Shown: positions 12,629 to 58,596 of the stretch, in pieces
Layout: each line of letters opens with the position of its first letter
Position numbering within the stretch: the stretch's first letter is position 1
Virus record (IMG/VR): IMGVR_UViG_3300042305_001773
Coordinates: 124,001 to 188,000 of that record
DNA length: 64,000 bases
Direction: 5' to 3' (one strand)
Program-made: the position numbers and the translations under genes
The notes under the pieces: model-generated
The model's input: only the letters and a program-made list of their open reading frames with translations
Told to the model about the DNA's origin: nothing
The model's database searches: none

Positions 12629-14059
12629 TTACGATGCACCAATAACTCGAACCTGATGGGCGGCGTACGGAACACGCGACGTAGTTCCGGCGTCGGCCAT
12701 CCACCGCTGCGCTTCTACGCAGGTGTTAACATCACGCGGCACGCTGATGAAGTAACGCCGCCCCGTAGAGCGGCAGAACAGCACCATTCGATTTTGACCC
12801 GTCCTGTTTTCTTGGCCGTTTGGCGGACCAACCAGCATCTCGGTCGTGTTATCAATATCGTTAACACGGCTGTCGAGCACTGGGCAGTCTGCCTCAGCAA
12901 TAAAGCGATCCCAGCCAAACTTTTCAATAGCGAGGCGGCGCGTTTCCTCGTTACGAATGCGCATGATATGCGCCGTCGACAACCGCTCTGGCTTTGCGAC
13001 AATCGTACGGCCGCCTTCGTTCATAAAGTGCCCGTCGTTAAACCACAGCTTCACGCCGTCGGCCCACTGTACGGCCGGCCCAGTCGTGCTGTGCAGGTTG
13101 TCCGACTCATTCAGCTCGATACGCGGGCGATCGGCAAGAATGATGCACGACGACTGAAACGCGGCAAACGCCGTGCAGTGGTGAAACACTTCGTGTTCCC
13201 ACGTAGTCGTCGGGTCGTCGATCTTCAGGATCTTGCACAGAATTTCGGCGTCGAGGGCCTGCGGCACGCTACCGAGAAACACGCCGTCGTCCGCAATTGA
13301 ATTCGTTGGGTTAACCAACTCATCTATAGCCATGACGCGATTCATTTCGCCAATAGATCCAGCGGTTGAGCTGCTGTCAAAAATGATTTGGCCGCTGATT
13401 TCAGACAGCTTCTTTTCGGTCTTTAATATTTCGTTGTTGCGCATCGTACCGTCCCAGCTACGAAAACTCTCAGTGATCGATTCAAGGCCGATCGTATCGT
13501 TGAGCATGGACCGGAAAAGATTGACGGTAATAGCCAAGTTATTTGTCTTGTACATGACAACGTTTTCTACGTTTTGACCGCGGTTCCGCCACCAGCGACG
13601 ACTCAGGCCAAAAGAGTTCGCGACGAGGTTTTCATTTGTCATGTACTCTGCGCGAATTGCCCGCAACCACGTGCGGGTAAACTCGTTGTTCTGCATGTTG
13701 CTCCACCACCGCCGGCGGTCGCTATTCCATCCGAGCAGCGAGTCTTTGCGTAACGGAATAAGAAACGCGCTGTCAATTTCAAGCTGCTGGCACAACTCTC
13801 GGGCGTATGTCTTGGTCATCCGTCCGCGCACCACCGCCATCGAGATCATGAACGTCACCGGCGACGAGGCAACGTGAAAAGTTACAGGGCTTTTTTTGTG
13901 GCGGTCAGACCGGAACGAGCCTAAACCGCTTGCATAGCCCGCGCGGAGTATGTCCGACGCTTTTGCGACGTTTGGCTGCCCGTTGTGAATAGTCTCAAGC
14001 CAGCGATTGATCGTGTTTTCAACAATGGTTCGAGTTGCTTTGGAGATCTTGGATTTCAT
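12629..14059 (-). CDS. DUF6745-domain protein
   Basis: LHSTTGPAVQWADG...IRNEETRR..IEKFGW...CRSTGRRY. Confidence 0.7.
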   Translation of the reverse strand: MKSKISKATRTIVENTINRWLETIHNGQPNVAKASDILRAGYASGLGSFRSDRHKKSPVTFHVASSPVTFMISMAVVRGRMTKTYARELCQQLEIDSAFLIPLRKDSLLGWNSDRRRWWSNMQNNEFTRTWLRAIRAEYMTNENLVANSFGLSRRWWRNRGQNVENVVMYKTNNLAITVNLFRSMLNDTIGLESITESFRSWDGTMRNNEILKTEKKLSEISGQIIFDSSSTAGSIGEMNRVMAIDELVNPTNSIADDGVFLGSVPQALDAEILCKILKIDDPTTTWEHEVFHHCTAFAAFQSSCIILADRPRIELNESDNLHSTTGPAVQWADGVKLWFNDGHFMNEGGRTIVAKPERLSTAHIMRIRNEETRRLAIEKFGWDRFIAEADCPVLDSRVNDIDNTTEMLVGPPNGQENRTGQNRMVLFCRSTGRRYFISVPRDVNTCVEAQRWMADAGTTSRVPYAAHQVRVIGAS

Positions 14060-14060
14060 G

Positions 14061-14516
14061 TTAGATGGTGGTTGCCATGGTTGGGTCAACAAACCCGCAG
14101 TTCAGCGTGCTGTCTGTCAGCACAATTTCAAATGTTTCAAAGTGATCGCAGTTCTGTACCCAGCTGCGCGGAATATTAATTACTTCGGCAAAGTCATCGC
14201 CGCCGACTAATTCTCGGCTATTGTCGTACCATTCGTCGTCGGTATTTGGGTTGCAGTGTTCGGCGTAAACAACGTGTGAGCCGCTATCAACACCTTCGAT
14301 GTCTCTCGGAATACCGTTGCTCATAAGGTATACGCCGCGATCGTGTACAAATACCAATCCGGGGCCTACTGGCGTACGGTCAGTCGGCGGTTCCAGCCCC
14401 AGCTCCTGAAACTGTTCGTCGGTCATGTTTTCGTGACCCATATCAAATTCAGTCGCGGCGTATGCGTGCTCAATGCAGCGCTTTACTTTCGCGGCTTTAA
14501 ACCGTAACACTGGCAT
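14061..14516 (-). CDS. DUF3085-family protein
   Basis: VHDRGVYLMSN...YAEHCNP...GGDDFAE. Confidence 0.8.
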   Translation of the reverse strand: MPVLRFKAAKVKRCIEHAYAATEFDMGHENMTDEQFQELGLEPPTDRTPVGPGLVFVHDRGVYLMSNGIPRDIEGVDSGSHVVYAEHCNPNTDDEWYDNSRELVGGDDFAEVINIPRSWVQNCDHFETFEIVLTDSTLNCGFVDPTMATTI

Positions 14517-14871
14517 CAGATAGCTCCTTCTCTAAGTTTTTACCTCTCCCAAACATCCACGAATCGCCCTCTTCTGGCTGAATACGGCGCAGCCAATCGG
14601 CAACGCTGGGGATGCGGCCAAGGTCTTCGTTGACGTGCTGCTCGCCGATATACCGTACCGGTACGACGCGTCCGGCAGAATTTGTGATTACTTTTCCAAA
14701 AATTCGTTCTGATAAGAAAATACCTTCGGAGTGGTGCCGCAGCGCGCGGTGGCGAAAGTCTGCCATGTGCGCTTTGGATCCATCAAACCATTCGTGGATA
14801 GCGAGATAATCGTCTACCTCGCCGCCCCACTTGCGCACTGACGACAGCGCGTGGTGATACGGATGTGCCAT
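14497..14871 (-). CDS. DUF6915-family protein
   Basis: MAHPYHHALSSVRKWGG...RHRALRHH...EQHVNEDLG. Confidence 0.8.
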   Translation of the reverse strand: MAHPYHHALSSVRKWGGEVDDYLAIHEWFDGSKAHMADFRHRALRHHSEGIFLSERIFGKVITNSAGRVVPVRYIGEQHVNEDLGRIPSVADWLRRIQPEEGDSWMFGRGKNLEKELSDASVTV

Positions 14872-15032
14872 TATTTAGCGTCGTACTCTTGGAAAATTTG
14901 AATGGTTTTACGTTCAGCCGCTTTCCAGTGATAGCCGCTGCTAATTAACGTCGCATAGTGGCGCTGCATGGCCGGGTCATTGAACCTTATTTTCAATTTT
15001 GTTTTGTGCGGTTTTTGCGCGCTGGTCGCCAT
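14871..15032 (-). CDS. small hypothetical protein
   Basis: Start MATSAQK; coupled. Confidence 0.45.
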   Translation of the reverse strand: MATSAQKPHKTKLKIRFNDPAMQRHYATLISSGYHWKAAERKTIQIFQEYDAK

Positions 15033-15034
15033 AG

Positions 15035-15268
15035 TTATTCCACAACAGTTGCTGACGACCATACGAAACGTTCAAATAACCAAGCCGGCCCGTCGTTCTC
15101 GTCAAAGACGACAAATGGACCCTCGTAACCTTCGGCGGTTGCGGCGTTAATTGCGTCTTCGTAATGTCCGCCGTCGTTATATTCTGGGTCCGCGCACCTG
15201 ACTTTACAGAAGTAAAAATCAGGTTCGCCGGCCGCGTTGTGCGCGGCTACGACGCATTTGATGTCCAT
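15035..15268 (-). CDS. hypothetical protein
   Basis: GAGGAG RBS; coupled. Confidence 0.6.
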   Translation of the reverse strand: MDIKCVVAAHNAAGEPDFYFCKVRCADPEYNDGGHYEDAINAATAEGYEGPFVVFDENDGPAWLFERFVWSSATVVE

Positions 15269-15610
15269 CTATCTCCTCGTTGCTTTTTCGATGGTAGCGA
15301 TCGCGTGGTCGATAACGAGCGTCGTGTCGTTGTCAGACTCGTTATCGGGATACAGCCGCTCGTATAGCGCGATTAGTTCGTCTTTGGTGTTACGCAACGC
15401 GTCAAGTAGTTCTGGCGCCGCAGCAATTAACCGCCCATTTGCGCGATCTTCGTCGGTGATAATTTCAGCGCCGTATCCGTCGTCTGCGTCGGCGTCGAAC
15501 GTGTTGCTTGTCCACGCAATAACGCGGCGCCCGCCGGACGCGACGATTTCTTCGGCTTCGATGTCGTTACCGGAGTCGCCGCCAACTTCCCACGGTCCGG
15601 GTGTGTGCAT
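15269..15610 (-). CDS. phage HTPGPW...ANxRLIAAAPELL family protein
   Basis: Widespread phage motif. Confidence 0.8.
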   Translation of the reverse strand: MHTPGPWEVGGDSGNDIEAEEIVASGGRRVIAWTSNTFDADADDGYGAEIITDEDRANGRLIAAAPELLDALRNTKDELIALYERLYPDNESDNDTTLVIDHAIATIEKATRR

Positions 15611-15612
15611 TG

Positions 15613-15822
15613 CTAGTCTCCTGTGTACAAGTCAAGCACAGAGGTCAGATCGCTGTGCGTAGCTGACCAGTCCATTTTGTCTTCGGCTATTTCAGAAGAA
15701 CGTTCCCAGTCGGCGTCGTCGGGTCTGCCGAACATGTCAGCGCTCCACCAAGCCAGAATGACGCTTTTGACGCCGTTCTTTTTCGCTCGTCTTAGATTGT
15801 CAATCGCCTCGTCAATAGTCAT
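15613..15822 (-). CDS. hypothetical protein
   Basis: Coupled ORF. Confidence 0.55.
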   Translation of the reverse strand: MTIDEAIDNLRRAKKNGVKSVILAWWSADMFGRPDDADWERSSEIAEDKMDWSATHSDLTSVLDLYTGD

Positions 15823-16112
15823 GCTAGCGGTTTCACTGTTGGTTCGGTTGCGCCTTCTGCAAACTCTATGTCTGCTTCGCCGCGCATCACCTGTTTAATG
15901 ATGTTGACGTCGTTGAGCACCCGTTCGATCCACGGCTGCATGCGCAAGATAAGCGGATCATCAGGCGGTCGCTTTGCCTTATACATCAGCATCATCGACA
16001 TACCCACGACCACCATTTCGAGCGGCGGACAATCAGCGGCCCAGTCGGCGGTATACGTGATTGGCGCCATCACCTCTTTAACGTCTTCTTCTGTCCATTT
16101 ATCTGCCGCCAT
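15819..16112 (-). CDS. hypothetical protein
   Basis: Coupled ORF. Confidence 0.55.
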   Translation of the reverse strand: MAADKWTEEDVKEVMAPITYTADWAADCPPLEMVVVGMSMMLMYKAKRPPDDPLILRMQPWIERVLNDVNIIKQVMRGEADIEFAEGATEPTVKPLA

Positions 16113-17296: not shown

Positions 17297-17315
17297 GTGT
17301 GCTCCAGTTAAATGA

Positions 17316-17349
17316 GGAGGGCGCCGGGGCCGAAACCCCGACGCCCTCC
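17316..17349 (-). other. GC-rich RNA hairpin with a UUCG loop
   Basis: Minus strand GGAGGGCGUCGGGG-U-UUCG-G-CCCCGGCGCCCUCC; mismatches become G-U pairs only on the minus strand. Confidence 0.7.
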
Positions 17350-17383
17350 ATGGCGTTTAAAGTCGGTACCTACAGCCGGTAGT

Positions 17384-17713
17384 TCACCGGCAGCAGCGGC
17401 AGCCGCGGCAGCTGCGGCAAGCGCGGACGGCGCGAACCGGAGCGGCTACAACCTGCACCGGGACTTCTACCACGGCGCGGGTCACGGTGCGAGTCTTCTC
17501 GATCGTCCGCCCGAAAAGCCCCTCGCGGCACGAGCTGCGGCACGAGCTTTCCGTGCAGCAGGTGCCGTTGGCGCAAGCCGTGGCGGGGGCAGCGGCGATT
17601 ACGGCCGCGGCCTCCGGGGCCTGCTTCAGCACGCTCTGCGGCTCACCGGCATCGCCAGCGAGAACGACGGACGAAACGAACGCAAGAACAACCGCTGCAA
17701 CACAAGACTTCAT
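17384..17713 (-). CDS. secreted Cys-rich small protein
   Basis: Signal peptide MKSCVAAVVLAFVSSVVLA; CANGTCC and CRSCRGCRCCR; AAGGAG RBS. Confidence 0.7.
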   Translation of the reverse strand: MKSCVAAVVLAFVSSVVLAGDAGEPQSVLKQAPEAAAVIAAAPATACANGTCCTESSCRSSCREGLFGRTIEKTRTVTRAVVEVPVQVVAAPVRAVRACRSCRGCRCCR

Positions 17714-17763
17714 GTCAATCTCCTTGAACTACCGAACAAATACTCCGACACGCGTCGGTGTAA

Positions 17764-17798
17764 CCTGCTCAGCTGTACTATCTGTATAGCTGAGCGGG
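17764..17798. promoter_or_regulatory. imperfect inverted repeat upstream of the secreted-protein gene
   Basis: CCTGCTCAGCTGTAC-TATCT-GTATAGCTGAGCGGG. Confidence 0.45.
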
Positions 17799-17859
17799 AT
17801 TTGATTGCAACCCCAAAAATCAACATAGATTATGGGGAGTTTTGGCAAAATGCGTAACG

Positions 17860-26329: not shown

Positions 26330-26550
26330 ATAACCTCCAGAAAGTACGTGGCCGGGTCACCGTTTAGTATACCCGGCCGCGCAGCTATCACTTGCGAGTC
26401 GTTTCTTTGGCGGCGGCCGCTGCAACCTGACACATGTAACCGAGTACATTTGCCAGTCCAGCAAGACCGTATATGAAAACATGCCCAGTGTATTTGAGGC
26501 TGTCTTCAACCCATTGAAATTCAGACTCGCTACCGTTGTTATTGTGGTTC

Positions 26551-28467
26551 ATGGATAAACCTGATCAAACAGTTACTGAAGCAGTTGACATGCCTTCCGT
26601 AGGCGTGCAATCACTTCTACAAGAATTAATCTCGATCGACGTGACGGATGTGCATTCTGTTCACGCGCGTGCCGCTGTTTTGCAGCAGCTCGCGGGTCGG
26701 CATGCTTTCCCGTCGCTCGAACCTATTTTGCCTTTGGTTCTGAACCTTAATGGACGCCCGTACAGCATTCAGAATCATATGCCTTTTTCCCCACTTTTCC
26801 GGCTACTGACGCCGAAAAATCAAGTGTGGTGCACGGGGCGTCAGGTATCAAAATCGACCAGCCTAGCAGCGCACGGAGTTGTAGTTGCCAACTCTATCCC
26901 GTTCTTCAAAACGTTATTCATCACACCGTTGTACGAACAGATACGCCGGTTCTCGAATAACTATGTGCGTCCGTTTATCGATCAGTCTCCTGTGAAGTCG
27001 CAATGGAGCGGCACGACGACCGAGAATTCAGTTCTGCAAAGATCTTTTAAAAACAACTCAATGATGTTGTTTAGCTTTGCGCTTTTAGATTCGGATCGTG
27101 TGCGTGGTGTTTCTGCAGACCGCGTGTGCATCGACGAAGTTCAGGACATGGATCCTGATCACGTGCCGATCATTCAAGAAACGATGTCTTACTCCAAATG
27201 GGCGACGAGTTATTACACAGGAACGCCGAAGACGCTAGATAACTTAATTTACGGATTGTATAAACGATCATCACAGGCCGAATGGTTTATACCTTGTCAT
27301 TCATGCAAGCACTGGAGCATCCCTTCGCTTGAGTATGACTTAGATAAAATGATCGGCCCATACAGCATTCATATCAGCGAGAACTATCCGGGCACCGTCT
27401 GCGCTAAATGTCAGAAACCGATCAGCCCAAGGCATGGTCGGTGGGTGCATAGATATCCCGAACGCCGCTGGCAATTTGCCGGGTATCACGTACCGCAGAT
27501 GATACTACCGCTTCATTTCTCCGACCCTGAAAAGTGGTCAACTCTATTGTTGAAGAGGGAAGGCTTTGGGAATATGACCCAAGCGCAGTTCTACAACGAG
27601 GTAATGGGAGAAAGCGTTGATACCGGTCAGAAGCTCATCAGCGAAACTGATTTGAAGGCTGCGTGCGTGCTAGACTGGGAAAACAAGAAAGAACCAGACC
27701 CTAAGTGCTTTGCAAATCTCTCGAACTACAAACATCGCATCCTTGCGGTCGACTGGGGCGGTGGCGGAGAAGCAGGTATTAGTTTCACCGTGCTTACTGT
27801 GCTGGGGTTCCGCCCAGATGGGACCATCGACACGCTGTGGGCCAAGCGCCTGCTTATTGGCGGCGATCATTTGGCCGAAGCGGTTGAATGTATGCGCTGG
27901 TCTAACTTGTTTAATTGCGATTTTGTCGCTCACGATTACACGGGCGCCGGCACGGTCCGCGAAACGGTCATGGTGCAGGCTGGGTTTAATCTAGAGCGAG
28001 TCTTGGCGATGCGACTTGTTCGTTCCGCGTCGCAAGATTTGATGGTGTTCAAACCGCCGACAGAGATCAATCATCGAGCGCACTATAGCCTCGACAAAAC
28101 GCGGTCGTTGCTGTACACGTGTCAGGCGATCAAGCTGAAGCAAGTCCGCTTCTTCCAGTATGACTGGGCGTCGCAGGACTCGCCGGGCTTGGTGTCGGAC
28201 TTTCTTGCGCTGGTAGAAAGTAAAGCCGAGTCTAGACTAGGCGGCGATATTTATACCATTACAAGGAACACGTTGTTGACTGACGACTTTGCGCAAGCTG
28301 TTAACCTAGGCTGCGCCGCTCTTTGGCACGTGAATAACGCGTGGCCTAATTTCGCGGAGATAGCTGGCGTAGCCCGGTTAAGCGAGCGTGTTGTTAAGGC
28401 AGAGACGCCGATGGATGACGACTGGGCGGATGATTCCATCGGGCGAAACTACTTTGGCGGGTATTAA
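26551..28467 (+). CDS. terL: terminase large subunit (lambda GpA-like)
   Basis: Walker A-like GRQVSKST, Walker B CIDEVQD, motif III GTP, CxxC..CxxC Zn finger, nuclease AVDWG and C-terminal DD. Confidence 0.88.
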   Translation: MDKPDQTVTEAVDMPSVGVQSLLQELISIDVTDVHSVHARAAVLQQLAGRHAFPSLEPILPLVLNLNGRPYSIQNHMPFSPLFRLLTPKNQVWCTGRQVSKSTSLAAHGVVVANSIPFFKTLFITPLYEQIRRFSNNYVRPFIDQSPVKSQWSGTTTENSVLQRSFKNNSMMLFSFALLDSDRVRGVSADRVCIDEVQDMDPDHVPIIQETMSYSKWATSYYTGTPKTLDNLIYGLYKRSSQAEWFIPCHSCKHWSIPSLEYDLDKMIGPYSIHISENYPGTVCAKCQKPISPRHGRWVHRYPERRWQFAGYHVPQMILPLHFSDPEKWSTLLLKREGFGNMTQAQFYNEVMGESVDTGQKLISETDLKAACVLDWENKKEPDPKCFANLSNYKHRILAVDWGGGGEAGISFTVLTVLGFRPDGTIDTLWAKRLLIGGDHLAEAVECMRWSNLFNCDFVAHDYTGAGTVRETVMVQAGFNLERVLAMRLVRSASQDLMVFKPPTEINHRAHYSLDKTRSLLYTCQAIKLKQVRFFQYDWASQDSPGLVSDFLALVESKAESRLGGDIYTITRNTLLTDDFAQAVNLGCAALWHVNNAWPNFAEIAGVARLSERVVKAETPMDDDWADDSIGRNYFGGY

Positions 28468-28790
28468 AAAATCCGCCAGCAGTAGTCCTCGATAAATTTT
28501 TTCATCGCCGCGTAATCTCTAATCTTGGCGGTTTCAATAACGTCAACGACGGCACAAGCCGCGGTATACAGCGCGGTCGCCGCTTCCGTACAATCCATTG
28601 AGGAGTCATACAACTCCCAATTAGCGCCAGAGCGCGGCACGGCTGGTTCCTTGCCTTCAAACGCGTCGGCGACGATTCGCTGAAATACGCCATCTGGTTC
28701 GGTATCCATCGCGCCAAACGAGCGATACTTTTCTTGAACTTTTTCGAATCTACGAATCGCTTCTTTGAGCGTCGTCACGGCAAGTGTCAT
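28464..28790 (-). CDS. hypothetical protein
   Basis: Stop overlaps the terL stop (TTAA). Confidence 0.6.
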   Translation of the reverse strand: MTLAVTTLKEAIRRFEKVQEKYRSFGAMDTEPDGVFQRIVADAFEGKEPAVPRSGANWELYDSSMDCTEAATALYTAACAVVDVIETAKIRDYAAMKKFIEDYCWRIF

Positions 28791-29232
28791 CGGATTTACC
28801 GCCGGCGTTGACAATCTCCATACCCTTTTCAGTTATCGAGAAATTGAAATCGTTTTTTTCGCAGTCATACTCAGCGTCTAGCAAACCACGCTGTACGCCG
28901 ACACGCATAATGTTCGATATGACACGAGCACCGAGCGCGCGAAATAACCGAAGCATCTTTTCTTTGTACTCTTCAAACGAGTTTGCGCCGATGCCGTACG
29001 CGCCGTCTGTTTGAATATCTGACAGGTCGCGTACAATTTGCTCGACCTCCCATATCTCCAAGAATTGACGCTGGTAGTCCAGATCGCATTCGGCTTCAGT
29101 CGGCTTTTCGTTTTGCATCTTTGCGATAAAGCCAGCAAACATCATAAGCACGTGATCGCGCAAATCTTCAATCGATCCGCAAATGCGGCGAGACGGCTGC
29201 TCGTCGTTTTCGTCTTCGTAGTCTTCGAACAT
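28750..29232 (-). CDS. hypothetical protein, possible winged-helix C-term
   Basis: GAGG RBS; RGLL...FSITEKG. Confidence 0.55.
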   Translation of the reverse strand: MFEDYEDENDEQPSRRICGSIEDLRDHVLMMFAGFIAKMQNEKPTEAECDLDYQRQFLEIWEVEQIVRDLSDIQTDGAYGIGANSFEEYKEKMLRLFRALGARVISNIMRVGVQRGLLDAEYDCEKNDFNFSITEKGMEIVNAGGKSDDTCRDDAQRSDS

Positions 29233-31750: not shown

Positions 31751-34384
31751 TTATCCAATGTCCCGGGCAAGGTCAGCTGCAGGTAACAAATATTGATCGC
31801 ACCAACTGCTGTCAACAAGAATACCCGGCAGGTTGCGCACCGCTTCCTCTCCGCCGAAAACTCCGCGACGCGTCAATAGTTTAACAAGCCAGAGCCAGTT
31901 TGGGGCTAGTGCTTTTCTATCGTAAAAGTAGCGATTGACCGCACGCTGGTTCAACCACCAATGCGTTTTTTTACGCACAATGTAGTTATTGGGCTGGCCG
32001 ACCTTTCTTGCCCGCGGCAATACAGCTAACGCGCCGGTTTGAACAGCGGTTGTTAACTCTGCAAAAAACGACAAATCAGCTTCGTTTTGCGTGATTAAAT
32101 GTTTGCAGGCGTAGTCGAGCTGGAATGCGCTGCCATACGTTTCTTGCAGCCAGTCGTGCAGGTCGGTAAGCACGGCTAATGCGGTCACCGGATTTGTCAG
32201 GCTAATGCGCATACGTTGACGCATCGCACGCTGAATATAGCCGGGCAAAATATACGCCAGCGGCGCAAAATCAGTTTTAAGCGGCGCCGCACCGCAAATA
32301 ATCTGCCAGCCATACATTGGCGCAATTGCCGCAGCCGTATGCGCCAGATGTACAAGCACGGGCCGGTTATGGCAGCGCGGTATCGTCAGACTCAGGCTGG
32401 TCGCGTCGAATACGCTAGCAACAGTTGTCGGCCACGCTAACTCCGCTGTGCGAGAGTACACTGCAGCGCTTGCGGACGCCCGGTGCAAAATATCAATACG
32501 CTGATGCGGGCAGCCAAGGACAGTCGCGATTTGTTGCGCGACGGCAAAGCTGTCGCCTGTAAAACCAGTGGCTACAGGATCGCGCCGCAAGATCGGGTCT
32601 ACAAGATCCGCGATAATGGTTGCCGCAACAGTCCAGACAAATGCGTTCTCTTGGCTAGGCGTTAAGAACTGGCGGATGGCCGGCGGGGCAACTGCCACCG
32701 GTTCAGGGAATATGGCATGTTTGTTTTTTTCGCTTGGCTGGTTTGGCGCTGATGGCGCGCCGTCAGCGGCTAGCTCGTAGTTTGCAAAACGAAATACGCT
32801 TGCGCGGTCATCCCAACCCAACCTGTTGGAGACGCACACCAGTTCTGGTTTACTCAAACCGATGGCGAGCAAATGGCTTCTGCTGTTCCACCGACTGTCG
32901 TACAGCATCACTTTTTTGTGTGACGCCACTACGCCAGCTGCATACGCCAGCAGCCCAGCCCGTTCGATTTTAAACGCGTTGTCGGCAAAATTGATTTCTT
33001 CGCCGTTGAGATAGATTGTACCGGCGTATGTTTTTTCGCCGTCGTCGGCTTGCGTGATCTTACTGATAACAATGTTCGCGTCGCAGATGTGGTGATTTGT
33101 AACGCTCCACCAGCCGTCAGCCTTTGGAATAACGGTATGTCGCCACGGCTGGGGCGCGGTTGGGGTAATGTGCTTGGACGTCTTGACGTGTGTTAACACT
33201 CGATCTGAAAAGCCGGGAGAAAAGTTACTACCAATTTTGTTTAAGAACGGCACTAACTTGTCTGGCGGTATTGTGAGCCGCGTCGCAAACGAGTGCGCCG
33301 CGATTTCATTCATCTGGCCAAGCGCGTTGCTCAGCCGGCTTTGCCACGTCTCGGCATTTCTACGAATTGAGACTAGCCGCGTCATTGCGTCTGTAGCCAG
33401 CCTGTTTTTTACGCGCTGGTTTTGCGCGACGATAGCGACGTAGCCACGGGCGTTGGCTGTACGGCTGATTAGTTCCGGCGACACTAAATGACTCTGAAAG
33501 ATTCGCGGGACTGGCGCAAATGAACACCAGCTACCGCCCCAGCTATTTGCCTCGACACCTGTATAACTCGCCATGACAGGCAGCAACGACTGCCCGCGGC
33601 GCAACATTTCACACTGCATACTCAGCGCCCACATCGGATCGTCTACGACGAATTGCGTGCTCTTTAGCGGTTCGGCGGCGGGAAGAAGTGCCGTACGCAA
33701 TAAGAAGTAACCGGCTTCTGGGCGACTGCGCTTGTACTGGTTTAGCGAGATAAAGTTTTGCTTGGCCATAAACTGCTCGTCGTACTGCACGACCAGAAAG
33801 CCGGTTATACGCCCGGGTAGGTCATAATACGGGAACACAAGGCTGGCGCCGTTTTCGCGCACGGGGCTAATAAGCGGCCGGCGCACAAAGCGTTGGAGTG
33901 TGTCTATCTGTTCTTTGTACGCCACACCGACAAGTCCGGCAGCGTCTATTTCTGGATATACACCAAGCTCGCGCAAGCGGCAGGCAATAACGTCGTCGTG
34001 GTGTCCCCAAATTTGCGCTTCGGCGTCAAACCAGAACTGCTCAAATTTTTCAAAGCGTTCAATTGCCCGGGCGTACTCGACGACCGCATTATCTTTTTCG
34101 GCCGGGTTTATAGCGTTTAACTCGATAAAACGGGCGATCGCTACATCCGGGCTTGTATTCCATAATGCCGCGCCAAACGTTATGATATCTCCATGGGCCG
34201 AGCACGAATTACAGTGCAGCCAAATACCGTTAGTGCTTGCGTCGTCGAACAGGTGTAGCGTATTTTTTTGACATAGCGGACAACTGACGACAGCCGGGAA
34301 AACCAACTGGTCCGGCGCAATGCCCAACGCCGACAGGGCAATCGCGTGGTGTTGGCGGCCAATTAAACAGGTAGGAAATCCCAT
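31751..34384 (-). CDS. primase/helicase-like protein, apparently degenerate
   Basis: N-term CPLC...CNSC Zn finger; LVFPYYD.PG.ITGF (DnaG-like); RLGWDD (DUF927-like); canonical TOPRIM and Walker A not seen. Confidence 0.55.
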   Translation of the reverse strand: MGFPTCLIGRQHHAIALSALGIAPDQLVFPAVVSCPLCQKNTLHLFDDASTNGIWLHCNSCSAHGDIITFGAALWNTSPDVAIARFIELNAINPAEKDNAVVEYARAIERFEKFEQFWFDAEAQIWGHHDDVIACRLRELGVYPEIDAAGLVGVAYKEQIDTLQRFVRRPLISPVRENGASLVFPYYDLPGRITGFLVVQYDEQFMAKQNFISLNQYKRSRPEAGYFLLRTALLPAAEPLKSTQFVVDDPMWALSMQCEMLRRGQSLLPVMASYTGVEANSWGGSWCSFAPVPRIFQSHLVSPELISRTANARGYVAIVAQNQRVKNRLATDAMTRLVSIRRNAETWQSRLSNALGQMNEIAAHSFATRLTIPPDKLVPFLNKIGSNFSPGFSDRVLTHVKTSKHITPTAPQPWRHTVIPKADGWWSVTNHHICDANIVISKITQADDGEKTYAGTIYLNGEEINFADNAFKIERAGLLAYAAGVVASHKKVMLYDSRWNSRSHLLAIGLSKPELVCVSNRLGWDDRASVFRFANYELAADGAPSAPNQPSEKNKHAIFPEPVAVAPPAIRQFLTPSQENAFVWTVAATIIADLVDPILRRDPVATGFTGDSFAVAQQIATVLGCPHQRIDILHRASASAAVYSRTAELAWPTTVASVFDATSLSLTIPRCHNRPVLVHLAHTAAAIAPMYGWQIICGAAPLKTDFAPLAYILPGYIQRAMRQRMRISLTNPVTALAVLTDLHDWLQETYGSAFQLDYACKHLITQNEADLSFFAELTTAVQTGALAVLPRARKVGQPNNYIVRKKTHWWLNQRAVNRYFYDRKALAPNWLWLVKLLTRRGVFGGEEAVRNLPGILVDSSWCDQYLLPAADLARDIG

Positions 34385-35564
34385 GACAAATATCCCGCTC
34401 GATCAAGCGCACGACGTCAGTGGCCGCGAAACCCACAGGCTGACTACCCTGTATCCGCAACCTGACTTTGTAAAAAATGCCGCGCACGAAAAACTAAGCA
34501 GTGCCGCGGATTTACCACGCCATCTATACGCTGATCAGCGCCATAAACTTTATCCGTGCCATACTGCCCCTGCAACATGGATGTCGGCGCTTTTCTTTGC
34601 TGACAAGCAAGCGCAGTTCGACGCCAAGGAGGCAGCGGCTATTCAATCTAAGATACACCAAGCCGCCGAGTATTTTGGTATTCGCGGGGCTGTGGCGGAA
34701 CTAGAAGAGAAGATTGCGGCCAGCTCGGCGCAGGATATTAACAGTTTGCCGGACTCGGAGTTCGCCATCGTGTGGGTCAGCGAGGTGGGCGGTAAAGAGC
34801 GCCACTGGCCGCTGCGGAACGCCGAGGAAGTCAAGTTCGCTGCGGCGCATTTTAAGACATTCCGCGACAACTTTGTGTTCGACGACCGGCACGTGATCGC
34901 CACCAAGATCCTCGAAAAGGCCGCGCAATACGGCGCCGACGTTTCGGGCGCTGAGGGCTCGCTAGAGCTGGCGGCTGGTCTGGGTGCGTGCGCCGCCAAG
35001 GTCGCGAGCGACATGATCAAAGACCGCGTAGGGCTCACCCGCCGGCAGCATTCGCAGCTGGCAGGCGAGTTGTCCAAGTTAGCCGAGGTTATCGACCAGA
35101 ACCCTGAAAGGGCTCGTACGGTCGAGATGCGGCTAAAGTTGGCGAGCGCGGTCGATAATTTCGATAGAAGCACCAACCTCTATCGCCTGTACGACGCCGG
35201 CGGCCTACCGCGGCCGGAAGAAGTCCTGTTTGCCATTACTGAAAAGGTGGCGCGCGACTTTTTAGATAGCAATGTCGAAACCACCACCGGCAACGTCTAC
35301 GCCCTCACTGATTTAGAGAAACTAGCGGTTGAAGACGTACGCGAGTGGCTTGGCGACGACTTTGCAGACGCGGTAAGTGCCGGCGGCGTATACATGGACC
35401 GCGACAAGCTGGCGGCGATTGTGCCCACGCTTGACCGTGGCATGGCTACCATGCTGGACCGGCTCATGCAGGACAAGTCTGCTGCGCCGGTTGTGAAGTC
35501 AGCGTCGGCGGCCAGTAACCTTCTTTCGCTTGCTCGCCTGCACGAGCTTGCGGCTGGCGGTTGA
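34383..35564 (+). CDS. protein with two DUF6582-like motifs
   Basis: LPRHLYAD..HKLYPC and LPDSEFA...ERHWPL..A..V..A..HF. Confidence 0.7.
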   Translation: MTNIPLDQAHDVSGRETHRLTTLYPQPDFVKNAAHEKLSSAADLPRHLYADQRHKLYPCHTAPATWMSALFFADKQAQFDAKEAAAIQSKIHQAAEYFGIRGAVAELEEKIAASSAQDINSLPDSEFAIVWVSEVGGKERHWPLRNAEEVKFAAAHFKTFRDNFVFDDRHVIATKILEKAAQYGADVSGAEGSLELAAGLGACAAKVASDMIKDRVGLTRRQHSQLAGELSKLAEVIDQNPERARTVEMRLKLASAVDNFDRSTNLYRLYDAGGLPRPEEVLFAITEKVARDFLDSNVETTTGNVYALTDLEKLAVEDVREWLGDDFADAVSAGGVYMDRDKLAAIVPTLDRGMATMLDRLMQDKSAAPVVKSASAASNLLSLARLHELAAGG

Positions 35565-36029
35565 CGCTTTCTTTTTTGGCTTACGCTTTTTGACAGGCGG
35601 ATTAAACAACGTCCGTATGCGACTGAGCACGGCGGTGTCGGCGGTGCGTTTGTAATTCACCACGTCCCACGCTTGATCAACGTGATACGTAAGCGCGCCT
35701 TCTAGGCGGCCAACACGACGCTGGTGTTCTAAGTCGTGAAGCAAGCTATACGCCGGATTGTACCACTTCCACGCGGCGTTCTTTACCTCATCAGCCGCCG
35801 AAATTTCAAATACCTCATGCGTGCGCTTGTCGATAATCATCTGCGCGCTGGCGGTAACTTTCGCGGGTGTTCCCGGTCGACGCTGTTGATCGTAAACCGC
35901 GTCAATAATGATTGCGTTCTTGCCGTAGCAGTTCCACAAAAATTGCGTAACTTCTTGAATGCGATAATTGCATGCCCGGAAAAACTCGGCTATCCGCGCT
36001 ACACCCGCGTGGTCTATTTGAATGCTCAC
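35499..36029 (-). CDS. hypothetical protein with a basic tail
   Basis: Coupled to the upstream gene (GTGA). Confidence 0.6.
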   Translation of the reverse strand: MSIQIDHAGVARIAEFFRACNYRIQEVTQFLWNCYGKNAIIIDAVYDQQRRPGTPAKVTASAQMIIDKRTHEVFEISAADEVKNAAWKWYNPAYSLLHDLEHQRRVGRLEGALTYHVDQAWDVVNYKRTADTAVLSRIRTLFNPPVKKRKPKKKASTASRKLVQASKRKKVTGRRR

Positions 36030-36274
36030 TGGAAAACTAACTCCTTTAGCTTTGTAAGTAACCTACGCACACTCCAGCGCGGAGTTGCGGTAACCGGCTG
36101 CGTACTCACAGTGCCGGGCTCAACGTTCTGAGAAGATAAGCCGCCCGTTTGTTCGTCTAACTCGCTGCGGCAGTATTCGAGATAGAGTTGCCAGTTGTCG
36201 TAGGCATCTCTGTCTTCGGCTCGTTCGTATGGGATGTAGGGGGGTTCGTCAGGGACTCTGTCGTTCCAGCCCAT
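36026..36274 (-). CDS. hypothetical protein
   Basis: AAGGA RBS inside the csrA tail. Confidence 0.55.
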   Translation of the reverse strand: MGWNDRVPDEPPYIPYERAEDRDAYDNWQLYLEYCRSELDEQTGGLSSQNVEPGTVSTQPVTATPRWSVRRLLTKLKELVFQ

Positions 36275-36447
36275 TGTTTGGTGTCCTTCTTTTTGCTCCC
36301 GTCAATTAATTCGCCACGCACGATTGATGTCGTTTGCGGCGCCGTTAGTCCAATCTTGACGCGATCGCCTGTGATTCCCAAAACCTTCACGACGATCCCA
36401 TCGCCAATTACGACTTCCTGTTCTTTCTTCCTTGAGAGTACAAGCAT
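36157..36447 (-). CDS. csrA: carbon storage regulator CsrA
   Basis: MLVLSRKKEQEVVIGD...VKIG.TAP...I.R.EL. Confidence 0.92.
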   Translation of the reverse strand: MLVLSRKKEQEVVIGDGIVVKVLGITGDRVKIGLTAPQTTSIVRGELIDGSKKKDTKQWAGTTESLTNPPTSHTNEPKTEMPTTTGNSISNTAAAS

Positions 36448-40883: not shown

Positions 40884-41783
40884 CTACGACTGCGCAGCGG
40901 CTTTGACAGCCGCGCGGAGGGTCGCGTTGGTTTGTAGTTCCGCAATAAGCTGAGTAAGCGTTAACTCGCCTTGCGGCCCTGTTGGCCCTGTAGCGCCCAT
41001 ATTGCCGCAGGGGCCGGTTGCACCCGCCTCTCCGACGCCTGTGGCTCCTGTCGCGCCACGCGGCCCTGACGGGCCTGTTATGCCGCGAGGGCCTGTGGCG
41101 CCCTGCGGACCCGTCGAGCCTGTGTCGCCTTTAGCGCCGCGGGTGCCAGCCGGCCCGGACTGCCCCTGTGGACCCTGTGCGCCTTGTGGGCCGGCCGTAC
41201 CTTGTGGGCCCATTAAACCCTGCGGCCCAATTAAGCCCTGCGGCCCCGGCGAGCCTTGCTGCCCGCGGTCTCCCTTTGGTCCGGTTGCCCCGCGTGGCCC
41301 GGTGGCTCCTGTGGCGCCCGTAGCGCCTGTAGAGCCGCGCGCGCCGTTTGTGCCGTTTATACCCGCCGGGCCAGTAGGGCCGGTGGCGCCTCTGGGACCG
41401 GTCGGGCCAGTGGGGCCGGTTGGCCCGGTTGGTCCCGTGGGGCCAGACGGACCGGTAGGGCCAGTAGCGCCAGTGGTTCCTTTTGGCCCGGTCGCGCCTG
41501 TTATGCCAGAAACGCCTGTCGAGCCGCGCGGACCTGTTGCGCCTATTTTGCCTGTCGGACCCGTTAAACCTGTCGGGCCTTTGTCGCCTTTGATTCCTTG
41601 CGCCCCCTGCGGTCCAGCGGGGCCTCTGGCGCCGGCGGGACCTTGCGGCCCAATAGGCCCGGGGTTTCCTTGCGGGCCTTGCGGTCCGGCAGGGCACACA
41701 CCGCAGCCACCGCCGCCCTGCGCCATTGTCGTACCGTCATACGGCACAAACTCGATTTCGTCGTTGTTGTCAGTGTCTGCCAT
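40884..41783 (-). CDS. collagen-like fibre protein
   Basis: ~80 Gly-X-Y triplets; N-term CGVC; C-terminal helix. Confidence 0.9.
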
Positions 41784-41785
41784 GT

Positions 41786-47542
<5,757 letters not shown>

Positions 47543-56874: not shown

Positions 56875-58596
56875 TCAGTTAGCCCAGCCGGCAGAGACAA
56901 CAGACACCGACACGTCTTGCGGTCCGGTTAAAAACACAGTTGTGCGGCCGGTAACGAGGCGGGCGATGTCCGTAGGTAGTTTCAAAATTGTGTTGTCACG
57001 CACATACATGATGCTGCCGTCGGGGCGGCGAATACGGCCAAACATATCAATACTGCCGAGCGCCTGCTGACTCGATAGGTGTTTGTGCGCGGCGTTACTG
57101 ATGACCGACGCGTGCAGCTGCCCGGAGAACCCAACACTGGCGACCGCGGCGCTGACGCTCTTTTGAATAGCTTCAATATCAGGCGTAGCGACGGCGGGGC
57201 TTTTGCGGATCTCAAACGAAATCTTTGTGAAACACGGCACAGCAGCTTTTACAAGCACGTCGGCAGCACGGGGGCGAGTATCGCGTCCGGCAAAATAGTC
57301 TTGTAACTCGCCGATCAGCGGCATGCCCGTCGTGGTGATGGCGTACCACTTTTTCGTCTGGTTTGGAATCAGCGCTGTCGCCGGTTGGATGTCGGTGTTC
57401 ACAAAACGGATGATGGCAGTCTGATATCGTGTATACGCGCTTTCGTGGAGATACAGCACGTCGGGCACGAAATCGAGTTCTAAGAAATCAGCCGTTCTTG
57501 TGTCTTGCAGCACGGAGTAATTTGCTTGCGGCACTCCAGCCAGCGCCGGATCCACGATGCGCGTGACTTCGTAAAACCCGGGGGCAGTGTTTCGACCAAT
57601 TGAGACCTGCCAGACAGTGCCGGTTGGTGTGCCGCCAACCAGAGCCTGTTCGTCGCAATTCCCGGCTGGAGTCGTCGGCGGCGTGTATGGTCCGACGTAA
57701 GTTGCCTCTAGCAAGTGCTCAATTTCTTGCGCGGACGCGTTGGTCTGCGCGTAGATGTCAACTTTTCCGCCACCCGAGATCGGGAACAAGGAGTGCTGGT
57801 CGCGCTGCTGCTCCGCGTCGCCGCAACCTAATACAGACAGGTGCTTGGTGTTTTTGAAGACCGGCTGCGCCATCACGGCCGCGACGTAGCTGGCGCGGCT
57901 GCCGATGGTCTTTGCCGCTAACCCTGTTGACAACCGCGCTAAATATTCTTCGTTGGTGGCTGGATCGCGACCGTCAATAAAATCTGCGGCTGCAAACGCG
58001 GCCGCTACGTTATTTAAAAGGTTGTCAGGAATCAGATTGACGCCGCGTTTAATGTTGCCAGCCGCACCAATTGAAAGTGCAACCACGTTGACCGTGGCGG
58101 CAAAAGTCCCGTCACCGACCGGGATCATTTTGCGTTGATTTGCGTCAGTCAGCGCTTCTGTCGTTGTTGTCGGTAATATGAGAAACGCCCCAGTTGGCAC
58201 AAAAATGGTTTCAGCGTCTTCGGCCGTAAACCGCACGGTGGCGGGAATCTCGGTGCGTACATCCGCGTTGAAAATGATCGTAATCGACCCGACGGCCGGA
58301 GTGCCGTTGTCGCGCTGCACGTTGAAGTTAGACAGCACCTGATCAACGATGTCCGTGTCAGCGAGCGTCGGGTCTTGCGTAATCTTTAATAGGCTGTTGC
58401 TTTGCTGAACGCGCGCAATGTTTTCTTGAATCGCCGCGTTTAACAGGCCGTCAAAATACAACACAAGATCGTGAAATACGCCGCGCGTTAGCTCGACCTC
58501 TGGGTGGCGTTCCACCATAAGCTGCGACAACGTCGCAACCATTTCTTGCACTTTAGTTGGGCTAAGCTGCGTTAAACTGGTTATTTCAATCGGCAT
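56875..58596 (-). CDS. baseplate J-like (gp6/gp47) wedge protein
   Basis: VVALSIGAAGNI...GRDPATNEEYLARL...GGKVDIY. Confidence 0.85.
   Translation of the reverse strand: MPIEITSLTQLSPTKVQEMVATLSQLMVERHPEVELTRGVFHDLVLYFDGLLNAAIQENIARVQQSNSLLKITQDPTLADTDIVDQVLSNFNVQRDNGTPAVGSITIIFNADVRTEIPATVRFTAEDAETIFVPTGAFLILPTTTTEALTDANQRKMIPVGDGTFAATVNVVALSIGAAGNIKRGVNLIPDNLLNNVAAAFAAADFIDGRDPATNEEYLARLSTGLAAKTIGSRASYVAAVMAQPVFKNTKHLSVLGCGDAEQQRDQHSLFPISGGGKVDIYAQTNASAQEIEHLLEATYVGPYTPPTTPAGNCDEQALVGGTPTGTVWQVSIGRNTAPGFYEVTRIVDPALAGVPQANYSVLQDTRTADFLELDFVPDVLYLHESAYTRYQTAIIRFVNTDIQPATALIPNQTKKWYAITTTGMPLIGELQDYFAGRDTRPRAADVLVKAAVPCFTKISFEIRKSPAVATPDIEAIQKSVSAAVASVGFSGQLHASVISNAAHKHLSSQQALGSIDMFGRIRRPDGSIMYVRDNTILKLPTDIARLVTGRTTVFLTGPQDVSVSVVSAGWAN

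What the first reader, a model, noticed from the sequence alone, without database searches (positions are those of the whole stretch)
34382..34385. Two divergent genes start within the same palindromic CATG
Seen: the minus-strand 877-aa gene's start (CAT 34382-34384) and the plus-strand gene's likely start (ATG 34383-34385, after GGTAGGA) overlap. There is no intergenic space, so each promoter and RBS must lie inside the other gene. Inference: obligatory antisense 5' leaders giving mutually exclusive (excludon-like) expression of a replication-type gene and a probably late gene.
Basis: partly seen in the sequence, partly recalled or inferred. Interest (0 to 1): 0.6.

Follow-up and report, generated by a model that had tools for sequence, protein, structure and literature searches.

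The report
Two phage genes sharing one CATG start
In an uncultured 205-kb lake phage, a primase-helicase gene and an opposite-strand gene of unknown function really do begin inside the same four bases (CATG). The layout is kept in every relative found and recurs at the terminase gene, so it is a real, rare gene arrangement, but its regulatory meaning is still untested.

Summary
CATG at 34382-34385 holds the ATG of the minus-strand 877-aa gene (31751-34384) and the ATG of the plus-strand 393-aa gene (34383-35564).

Evidence that both starts are real:
- All 53 related loci keep the junction, down to 34% identity of the 877-aa protein.
- Other in-frame starts are not conserved.
- Codons 8-28 of the 877-aa gene show coding periodicity.
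- The plus gene's Shine-Dalgarno AGGA is the reverse of codons 3-4 (Pro4 is always CCT).

By fold, the 877-aa protein is a DnaG-type primase joined to a Cch/SaPI-Rep-like helicase domain that lacks a Walker A motif. The 393-aa protein is a virus-only helical protein, with only a weak lead to head assembly.

Context changes the picture. About 209 genes lie on the minus strand and three on the plus. The terminase large subunit is also reversed and starts head-to-head with a small gene at CATG 26550-26553 (CATATG in many relatives). The layout resembles a noncontiguous operon or divergent excludon.

The overlap of the two translation-initiation regions follows from geometry. Mutual exclusion is inference only, because no stranded RNA data were available. 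Prodigal forbids 5'-5' overlaps, and 61 of 100 public gene calls truncate the primase gene.

The parts
34382..34385 (.). Palindromic CATG that holds both start codons. The minus ATG is the complement of 34382-34384, the plus ATG is 34383-34385, and 2 nt are shared.
   Evidence: It is kept in 53 of 53 loci with both genes, including L032, where the 877-aa homologue is only 34% identical.
31751..34384 (-). 877-aa gene. It has an N-terminal zinc ribbon (CPLC...HCNSC), a DnaG-type primase RNA-polymerase domain (residues about 4-402) and a Cch/SaPIbov1-Rep-like helicase-fold domain (about 415-873) without a Walker A motif.
   Evidence: Model pLDDT is 87.5. Foldseek and VIA give 2au3 Z 13.4, 5dgk_A Z 13.4 and 8tch_A Z 12.7. 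No GK[ST] motif is present. Coding periodicity holds from the first codons.
34383..35564 (+). 393-aa gene for a virus-only, mostly helical protein of unknown function. It is more conserved than the primase gene (64-98% identity). Its N-terminal ~125 residues are DUF6582-like.
   Evidence: About 95 of 100 public gene calls start at this ATG.
34370..34376 (+). GGTAGGA, the Shine-Dalgarno site of the 393-aa gene, with AGGA 6 nt before the ATG. It is also codons 3-5 (F-P-T) of the 877-aa gene on the other strand.
   Evidence: Pairing with the anti-SD gives dG -6.5 kcal/mol, in the top 5% of background. An AGG/GGAG core is kept 6-12 nt upstream in all relatives. Pro4 is always CCT, Thr5 is ACC in 92% and Cys6 is TGT in 91%.
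34393..34400 (-). GAGCGGGA on the minus strand, a weak SD-like stretch 8 nt before the 877-aa gene's ATG. It lies inside codons 4-6 (I-P-L) of the 393-aa gene.
   Evidence: dG -4.9 kcal/mol, about the median for this genome's genes. Synonymous constraint on the plus gene's first codons is only slight (0.67-0.71 against a mean of 0.74). This is a weak assignment.
34320..34322 (+). Upstream in-frame ATG of the plus ORF. It is rejected as the start.
   Evidence: It has no SD (dG -2.7). It is absent in at least 12 of 24 relatives, and several have a stop between it and the CATG.
34325..34327 (-). TTG at codon 20 of the 877-aa gene. This is the kind of downstream start behind the N-terminally truncated public calls, which use various non-conserved starts. 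It is rejected as the true start.
   Evidence: It has no SD (dG +0.3). It becomes TTA or other codons in relatives. The truncated public calls use nine different offsets.
35499..35564 (.). A 66-nt tail-to-tail overlap between the 3' end of the 393-aa gene and minus ORF 35499..36029, whose C-terminal tail is KRKKxVxRRR. The plus gene therefore has no free flank on either side.
   Evidence: An overlap of 54-78 nt is kept in about 17 relatives, while others have a different neighbour or a small gap.
26550..26553 (.). Second head-to-head CATG. It holds the terminase large-subunit ATG (26551-26553, gene 26551-28467, plus strand) and the ATG of a conserved 54-aa membrane-like ORF (26388-26552, minus strand).
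   Evidence: TerL matches PF05876. Among unique relatives, 20 have CATG, 33 have CATATG and 3 have gaps of 4-12 nt.

Best explanation
SHOWN. The window comes from a 205-kb uncultured freshwater phage in which nearly every gene lies on one strand. The 393-aa gene is a single reversed gene wedged into that array with no spare DNA. Its ATG shares two bases with the ATG of the primase-helicase gene (CATG), and its 3' end overlaps the next minus-strand ORF. Its Shine-Dalgarno site is written in codons 3-5 of the primase gene.

INFERRED, origin. One tightly packed gene was inverted precisely. That gives CAT|ATG, the CATATG form still seen at the terminase junction, and loss of two bases then gives CATG.

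INFERRED, function. Neither gene has a private 5' region, so any SD-led mRNA of one is antisense to the other's ribosome-binding site and first codons. The primase mRNA either starts inside the reversed gene or reads through all of it from upstream. The pair should therefore behave like a noncontiguous operon or divergent excludon: polymerase collision and RNA duplex formation would make the two genes anticorrelated. The two reversed genes (the 393-aa gene and the terminase) bracket the replication/repair module at 28.5-34.4 kb.
For: Both starts are real and conserved.

The SD is embedded in the neighbour's codons, where synonymous diversity is the lowest of the 877-codon gene: 0.44 against a mean of 0.79.

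Genome layout: about 209 minus-strand genes and 3 plus-strand genes. Both embedded reversed genes abut their divergent neighbour at -2 or 0 nt, while the third plus gene has a normal 166-nt gap and a strong SD.

The second junction occurs as both CATG and CATATG, never more than 12 nt apart, in 56 unique relatives.

The 3' overlap is 66 nt.

The genome is not maximally compact elsewhere: the crude gene call leaves about 9% of it uncovered.

Noncontiguous operons and divergent excludons are documented, including in phages (PMC7154746, PMC12288877).
Against: There are no transcript data. The only RNA signal is two short unstranded contigs inside the 393-aa gene, and DNA carry-over cannot be excluded.

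No promoter was found for either gene. Beyond the first ~10 codons there is no clear block of synonymous constraint that would mark an embedded promoter.

Once formed, a shared start is self-locking, because both N-termini are constrained. Conservation alone therefore does not prove a regulatory role.

The 3' neighbour varies among relatives.
Confidence: 0.5

Rival explanations
1. Historical accident with no regulatory role. A gene-sized inversion in a tightly packed genome left the two ATGs abutting, and the arrangement persists only because both N-termini and both start codons are under ordinary purifying selection. On this view expression timing is set elsewhere and antisense effects are negligible.
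For: CATATG and CATG are exactly what a precise single-gene inversion, followed by a 2-nt loss, would give. Mutating the shared A or T would destroy both starts, so the junction is self-stabilising. No conserved promoter-like block was detected. Spacing at the terminase junction drifts a little, with gaps of +4, +11 and +12 in three relatives.
Against: The genome tolerates many gaps elsewhere, and the third plus-strand gene has a normal 166-nt upstream region, so compaction alone is not enforced. Two independent junctions keep a spacing of 12 nt or less across a family in which the primase protein has diverged to 34% identity. Overlap of the initiation regions is unavoidable for SD-led mRNAs.
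Confidence: 0.3
2. Bidirectional leaderless initiation. The phage's own RNA polymerase starts transcription at or next to the palindromic CATG/CATATG in both directions. The mRNAs would then begin at, or within 2 nt of, their AUGs and would not overlap, so the design would be a compact two-way promoter with competing polymerase binding.
For: TerL has no SD in any relative (dG -2.3). A -10-like hexamer (TATAAT, CATAAT, GATAAT, TATAGT or TATTGT) sits at the right distance for a start at or 2 nt before its AUG (this is my reading of the sequences). The phage encodes a non-canonical RNA polymerase whose promoters are unknown. Both junctions are palindromes.
Against: The 393-aa gene keeps a good SD 6-12 nt upstream in all relatives, and the small ORF at the terminase junction has AGGTG 6 nt upstream in the CATATG group. 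Both need a leader. The -10-like hexamers are also codons 3-4 (Asn-Tyr) of the small ORF, so they may reflect protein constraint. There are no TSS data.
Confidence: 0.12
3. Annotation artefact. One of the two proteins really starts further in, as in the 858-aa gene calls, which would leave a normal intergenic gap of about 55-80 nt.
For: 61 of 100 public gene calls for the 877-aa family start 6-22 codons downstream. The SD of the 877-aa gene at the CATG is only average.
Against: The truncated calls use nine different, non-conserved starts, and Prodigal forbids overlapping 5' ends by rule (PMC2848648). Codons 8-28 show coding periodicity, indels only in threes and no stops. Residues 4 onward align to the N-terminus of the DnaG zinc-binding domain. 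The CATG ATG is the only start kept in every relative.
Confidence: 0.03

Closest known systems
Noncontiguous operon (S. aureus menE-menC-MW1733-ytkD-MW1731; also reported in staphylococcal phages), as reviewed in PMC7154746
   Same: A single gene on the opposite strand is interspersed in a run of co-oriented genes. Its mRNA would necessarily be antisense to the array's transcript. No room is left for separate control regions.
   Different: Co-transcription of the flanking minus-strand genes across the reversed gene is not shown here. The head-to-head ends share bases of the start codons themselves, and the arrangement occurs twice (393-aa gene and TerL), bracketing a replication module. The polymerase is probably phage-encoded.
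Divergent excludon (overlapping 5' UTRs of divergent neighbours; Listeria, E. coli, S. aureus), PMC12288877 and PMC7154746
   Same: Divergent neighbours whose leaders must overlap, so each mRNA doubles as an antisense RNA to the other.
   Different: Known excludons have an intergenic region and long UTRs that are defined by RNA-seq. Here the coding sequences themselves overlap and no RNA evidence exists. Reciprocal repression is untested.
Face-to-face promoters of divergent genes with transcriptional interference (coliphage 186 pR/pL; Ecl18kI R-M system), PMC3675496 and PMC2760811
   Same: Divergently oriented genes whose promoters must lie beyond each other's start, so transcription is convergent over the junction. 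This is a phage precedent for switching by interference.
   Different: Those systems have mapped promoters, repressors and a non-coding spacer (62 bp in phage 186, from my own knowledge). Here there is no spacer, no mapped promoter and no known regulator.
Divergent (5'-5') overlapping gene pairs in prokaryotic genome surveys (PMC4161906; PMC2478687)
   Same: The same formal class: start regions of opposite-strand genes overlap by a few bases.
   Different: The class is very rare (2 of 663 overlapping pairs in E. coli) and often suspected of misannotation. This pair is validated by deep comparative evidence and a fold match to the N-terminus.
DnaG primase fused to a helicase (T7 gp4, Twinkle) and Cch/SaPI Rep helicases. 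This comparison concerns the 877-aa protein only.
   Same: Zinc ribbon plus TOPRIM primase fold (Z 10-13) followed by a helicase-fold domain (Z 12.7-13.4).
   Different: The C-terminal domain is Cch/MCM-like, not RecA-type as in gp4, and it lacks a Walker A GK[ST]. There is no Pfam or PHROG hit.

Membership tests
Divergent (head-to-head) overlapping gene pair | Both reading frames are real protein-coding genes | tested here: met
   Hundreds of homologues exist for each. Both use synonymous codons from codon 2-3 onward. The genes show coding periodicity. The 877-aa model is confident and the 393-aa model is moderate (pLDDT 77.5).
Divergent (head-to-head) overlapping gene pair | The true start codons overlap or abut on opposite strands | tested here: met
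   The CATG ATGs are the only starts kept in 53 of 53 loci. Alternative starts are not conserved and lack an SD. The fold alignment begins at residue 4.
Noncontiguous operon | One or more genes on the opposite strand interspersed among co-oriented genes | tested here: met
   A crude whole-genome gene call gives about 209 minus and 3 plus genes. The 393-aa gene and TerL are single reversed genes flanked by minus genes on both sides.
Noncontiguous operon | Flanking co-oriented genes are co-transcribed across the reversed gene as one mRNA | not testable with these tools
   Only unstranded Logan contigs were available. The RNA run X23 has two short contigs inside the gene.
Excludon (divergent type) | The transcripts of the two neighbours overlap | tested here: inconclusive
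   Overlap follows from geometry if translation is SD-led, and the plus gene's SD lies in the neighbour's codons. No transcript ends were observed, and a leaderless alternative is not excluded for the 877-aa gene.
Excludon (divergent type) | Reciprocal, mutually exclusive expression that depends on RNase III or transcriptional interference | not testable with these tools
   There is no expression time course. The phage is uncultured, and the nearest cultured TerL is at most 31% identical.
DnaG-type primase (877-aa protein, N-terminal half) | Cys/His zinc ribbon followed by a TOPRIM RNA-polymerase-domain fold | tested here: met
   C35, C38, C58 and C61 are invariant. Residues 4-402 match 2au3 with Z 13.4 over 352 residues, and several DnaG RNA-polymerase domains match with Z 11.7-13.1. 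Catalytic residues were not checked one by one.
Replicative AAA+/Cch-type helicase (877-aa protein, C-terminal half) | Walker A P-loop (GxxxxGK[ST]) for ATP hydrolysis | tested here: not met
   The protein has no GK[ST] anywhere. The fold still matches Cch and SaPIbov1 Rep (Z 13.4 and 12.7). It is therefore helicase-like in fold, but activity is doubtful.
Leaderless mRNA / bidirectional promoter | Absence of a Shine-Dalgarno leader, with the transcription start at the AUG | tested here: not met
   The feature is not met for the 393-aa gene, which keeps a conserved SD (dG -6.5). It remains open for TerL (no SD, dG -2.3) and for the 877-aa gene (dG -4.9). TSSs are not testable here.

The most novel reading that the evidence does not exclude
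In this family of uncultured jumbo phages, the palindromic start junctions (CATG/CATATG) may be functional two-way initiation sites for the phage's own fused beta/beta'-type RNA polymerase. On this reading, one gene of each pair (TerL, and perhaps the primase-helicase) is made from a leaderless or 2-nt-leader mRNA, while its partner uses an SD written in the other's first codons. The reversed genes would then act as built-in switches or insulators around the replication module. This would be a new way of coupling promoter, start codon and antisense control.
Probability: 0.1. Interest if true: 0.8.

Novelty: new variant of a known kind. Interest (0 to 1): 0.45.

Why it matters
Head-to-head gene overlaps are the rarest class of overlap in prokaryotes and are usually dismissed as annotation errors. 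This is a clean, deeply conserved case, found twice in one genome, in which the ribosome-binding site of one gene is demonstrably encoded in the first codons of its divergent neighbour.

It gives a natural system for testing how far antisense and collision effects can time phage genes (replication against packaging or assembly) when no intergenic DNA is available.

There is also a practical point. Prodigal-type callers cannot output this arrangement, and 61 of 100 database entries for the primase-helicase family are N-terminally truncated and lose part of the zinc-binding domain. Similar pairs are probably undercounted in viral catalogues.

Tried and rejected
- Close relatives among cultured phages: megablast and tblastn of both proteins against INPHARED found nothing. 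TerL reaches at most 31% identity to cultured phages.
- Family scans: Pfam and PHROGs gave nothing for the 877-aa protein and only a sub-threshold DUF6582 hit for the 393-aa protein.
- Function of the 393-aa protein: Foldseek on PDB, VIA wide, BFVD, a PDB profile search and the ESM Atlas gave only generic helical-bundle matches, uncharacterised viral clusters and a weak DUF6582/Peptidase_S78 association. No function is assigned.
- Sigma-70-type promoters: none in 33600-36300. The two terminator-like hits are below the number expected by chance.
- Repeated element: the conserved AAACAGGTAGGAAA is not a repeat or promoter motif, because it occurs only once in the genome.
- Invertible segment: one 17-nt imperfect inverted repeat flanks the gene in the window (34401-34417 and 35662-35678), but nothing comparable is kept in five diverse relatives, and no relative has the other orientation.
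- RNA structure at the junction: folding of either strand is no better than shuffles.
- RNA evidence: one search and one lay of reads gave only unstranded contigs. X24 is probably DNA of a relative. This is inconclusive, not negative.
- Embedded promoters from synonymous constraint: apart from the first ~10 (weakly ~25) codons of the 877-aa gene, dips such as codons 56-70 coincide with the Cys/His/Trp-rich zinc ribbon and were not taken as evidence.
- Tools not used: the large representative-protein search and complex prediction, because no claim here rests on them.


Full report
**Where the window lies.** The window is bases 124001-188000 of a 205,044-bp IMG/VR virus record that CheckV rates as complete. 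GC content is 55%. No cultured phage is close. Megablast and tblastn of both proteins against INPHARED found nothing, and the terminase is at most 31% identical to any cultured phage. Near-identical DNA is present in many lake and freshwater metagenomes.

**The observation.**
- The plus strand reads caggtaggaaatccCATGacaaatatc, with CATG at 34382-34385.
- On the minus strand, an 877-codon ORF (31751..34384) starts at the ATG complementary to 34382-34384. An in-frame stop lies 7 codons upstream with no start in between.
- On the plus strand, the ORF is open from ATG 34320 and contains ATG 34383 in frame. From ATG 34383 it encodes 393 aa and stops at 35562-35564.

**Are these the true starts? 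Loci examined.** I fetched 24, then 51, related IMG/VR loci with the plus protein (64-97% identity), plus one locus (L032) whose 877-aa homologue is only 34% identical. The first set overlaps the second, so counts below use the 51 plus L032. Every locus that carries both genes has a CATG from which both long ORFs start. That makes 53 including the window, or 45 unique sequences.

**Are these the true starts? The plus gene.**
- The upstream ATG 34320 is missing in at least 12 of the first 24 loci, and several have a stop 9-11 codons upstream of the CATG.
- ATG 34320 has no Shine-Dalgarno pairing (dG -2.7), whereas ATG 34383 has AGGA 6 nt upstream (dG -6.5, top 5% of background).

**Are these the true starts? 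The minus gene.**
- The alternative TTG at codon 20 has no SD (dG +0.3) and mutates to non-start codons in relatives.
- Codons 8-28 show the coding pattern of variability (position entropies 0.99/0.51/1.38; Wilcoxon p = 2.6e-5).
- The distance from the ATG to the invariant FP...CPxC anchor changes only by whole codons (27, 28 or 29), and none of the 45 sequences has an in-frame stop.
- In the AlphaFold model (pLDDT 87.5), residues 4-402 align with the Aquifex DnaG zinc-binding and polymerase domains from DnaG residue 5 (Z 13.4, 352 residues). The first helix (residues 10-19) is therefore part of the fold.

**Each gene's initiation region lies inside the other gene.**
- The plus gene's SD core AGG (34373-34375) is the reverse complement of Pro4 CCT of the minus gene. 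Among relatives with Pro there, CCT is used 100% of the time. Thr5 is ACC in 92% and Cys6 is TGT in 91%.
- The first ten codons have the lowest normalised synonymous diversity of the whole 877-codon gene (0.44 against a mean of 0.79).
- Distant relatives replace AGGTAGG by GGAG 9-12 nt upstream, so the function is kept rather than the sequence.
- The minus gene's SD is only average: GAGCGGGA at 34393-34400, dG -4.9. The matching constraint on the plus gene's first codons is slight.

**What the genes are.**
- The 877-aa protein has no Pfam or PHROG hit. By fold it is a DnaG-type primase (zinc ribbon plus TOPRIM domain) joined to a domain like the Cch and SaPIbov1 Rep helicases (Z 13.4 and 12.7). 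It has no Walker A GK[ST], so ATPase activity is doubtful. 'Replication-type' is supported.
- The 393-aa protein is virus-only and mostly helical (pLDDT 77.5). It is more conserved than the primase. It has no informative match in PDB, BFVD or the Atlas.
- The only lead for the 393-aa protein is that its first ~125 residues resemble DUF6582, a domain that occurs in one viral cluster of prohead proteases (Peptidase_S78). 'Probably late' is therefore weakly suggested, not shown.

- A crude codon-usage gene call puts about 209 genes on the minus strand and three on the plus strand. A fourth long plus ORF at 17312-17857 looks spurious.
- One plus gene (genome 50416-50746, outside the window) has ordinary gaps and a strong SD.
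- The other two are the 393-aa gene and the terminase large subunit (26551-28467; PF05876).
- The terminase also starts in a CATG (26550-26553). It shares it with a conserved 54-aa ORF that has an E[FL]QW[VL]ED motif followed by a hydrophobic stretch.
- Among unique relatives of that junction, 20 have CATG, 33 have CATATG (the two ATGs abut exactly) and three have gaps of 4-12 nt.
- The 3' ends are also tight. The terminase stop overlaps its neighbour's stop (28464-28467). The 393-aa gene overlaps ORF 35499..36029 by 66 nt, and this is kept in about 17 relatives.
- The two reversed genes bracket the replication/repair module at 28.5-34.4 kb, which holds the primase-helicase, a pyrimidine-dimer glycosylase and a GNAT acetyltransferase.

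**How it most likely works.** Three things are shown: the starts are shared, the SD is embedded in the neighbour's codons, and the reversed genes have no private flanks. The rest is inferred.
- *Origin.* CAT|ATG is what a precise inversion of one gene in a tightly packed array gives. CATG follows by loss of two bases with both starts kept.
- *Function.* An SD-led mRNA of the 393-aa gene must start inside the primase gene. The primase mRNA must either start inside the 393-aa gene or read through it. Each mRNA is then antisense to the other's ribosome-binding site. This is the geometry of noncontiguous operons and divergent excludons, in which polymerase collision and RNase III cleavage give reciprocal expression (PMC7154746; PMC12288877).
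- *Confidence.* I put about 0.5 on this having regulatory effect.

**Rivals.**
- The main rival (0.3) is that the layout is a self-locking relic without regulatory use.
- A third reading (0.12) is leaderless, two-way initiation at the palindrome. TerL lacks any SD and has a -10-like hexamer at the right distance. The phage also encodes its own polymerase: one 1468-aa ORF carries both a beta-type and a beta'-type domain. No sigma-70 region 2 domain was found. A T7-type polymerase search also found nothing, but its control was uninformative.
- The conserved SDs of the 393-aa gene and of the small ORF argue against a fully leaderless design.

**What could not be settled.**
- No sigma-70-like promoter is present, and that scan does not cover a phage polymerase.
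- No conserved inverted repeats flank the gene.
- RNA folding at the junction is unremarkable.
One metatranscriptome (X23) has two ~100%-identical contigs at 34763-34965 and 35235-35399, and none from this phage (99% or more identical) elsewhere in the 5-kb stretch laid.

**Comparison and novelty.**
- Divergent overlaps are the rarest class: 2 of 663 overlapping pairs in E. coli (PMC4161906).
- Prodigal explicitly forbids overlapping 5' ends (PMC2848648).
- In line with that rule, only 39 of 100 public gene calls of the 877-aa family start at the CATG Met, and 61 are truncated at nine different positions. About 95 of 100 calls of the 393-aa family are correct.
- I rate the finding a new variant of a known kind. 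It belongs with excludons and noncontiguous operons, taken to the limit of shared start-codon bases, duplicated in one genome and conserved across a phage family.
- Interest is moderate (0.45) because the regulatory claim remains untested.

Noticed in passing
window 26550-26553, with genes 26551-28467 (+) and 26388-26552 (-): The terminase large subunit and a conserved 54-aa membrane-like ORF (E[FL]QW[VL]ED motif) start head-to-head in a second CATG. Unique relatives have CATG (20), CATATG (33) or gaps of 4-12 nt (3). TerL has no Shine-Dalgarno site in any of them.
   Followed up: yes
relatives of the CATATG group, e.g. L105:1515-1545, L110, L094 (about 15-35 nt inside TerL): A short hairpin with compensatory changes (GCAGGttgaaCCTGC, GCGGGatcaatCCCCGC, GCGAGGtaagtCCTCGC, CGGACacaagGTCCG) lies just inside the TerL coding region, which is upstream of the small ORF on the other strand. 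It is not present in the window's own CATG group.
   Followed up: no
same loci, 9-14 nt before TerL's ATG; window 26540-26545: A -10-like hexamer (TATAAT, CATAAT, GATAAT, TATAGT; TATTGT in the window) sits at a distance that would start TerL mRNA at or 2 nt before its AUG. The same bases encode Asn-Tyr at codons 3-4 of the small ORF (Asn-His in the window's CATG group), so the cause of the conservation is ambiguous.
   Followed up: partly
genome G000:C1 about 13,560-16,010, minus strand (outside the window; loci L162, L163): One 1468-aa open frame carries both an RNA polymerase beta-type domain (PF00562, E 5e-53) and a beta'-type domain (PF00623, E 8e-24). This suggests a fused multisubunit-type phage RNA polymerase. 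No sigma-70 region 2 domain was found; a search for a T7-type polymerase also found nothing, but its control was uninformative.
   Followed up: partly
genome G000:C1 about 46,800-71,000, minus strand (outside the window), e.g. 55,212-55,160, 53,876-53,825, 51,627, 47,598: A repeated composite motif, often right after a hairpin plus T-run and TTAGCTAT: CTAAATAA, 16 nt, then ATATCTAGT. It looks like a phage-specific (early?) promoter class. None lies near the two head-to-head junctions.
   Followed up: partly
window 31751-33140 (residues about 415-873 of the 877-aa protein): The Cch/SaPI-Rep-like helicase-fold domain has no Walker A GK[ST] motif. At the place where I expect the P-loop, from my own reading of the sequence against the model's strand-helix pattern, it reads GFTGDSF. 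The domain may be an inactive or scaffold version.
   Followed up: partly
L010 / L035 / L007 (IMGVR_UViG_3300022752_000023): In this relative the primase-helicase gene is broken by a frameshift after about 317 codons (the match is 1 nt shorter). This may be an assembly error or a pseudogene. The CATG junction is intact.
   Followed up: no
window 35499-35564 and 35505-35580: The last 22 codons of the 393-aa gene overlap, tail-to-tail, the basic C-terminal tail (KRKKxVxRRR) of minus ORF 35499..36029. On the plus strand, a large stem ending at the stop codon is followed by CGCUUUCUUUUUU (z -2.1), which may be a terminator.
   Followed up: partly
window about 28448-28486: A strong hairpin (z -3.2) has the overlapping stop codons of TerL (TAA at 28465-28467) and of minus ORF 28464..28814 in its loop (ATTAAAAAA).
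   Followed up: no
window 34383-34760 (residues 1-125 of the 393-aa protein): The N-terminal domain resembles DUF6582: Pfam 21.7 bits, below the cut-off, and an Atlas row with TM 0.62 by the match. DUF6582 also occurs in a viral cluster of Peptidase_S78 prohead proteases. This is a weak lead that the protein acts in head assembly.
   Followed up: partly
window 40884-46390, minus strand: Two large proteins (299 aa and 1534 aa) carry collagen triple-helix repeats and are probably tail fibres. A Baseplate_J protein lies at 56875-58596.
   Followed up: no
crude intergenic gaps of genome G000: GGTTCGA, the tRNA T-loop core, is enriched in regions left uncalled by the crude gene finder. This hints at tRNA genes. 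No tRNA scan was run.
   Followed up: no
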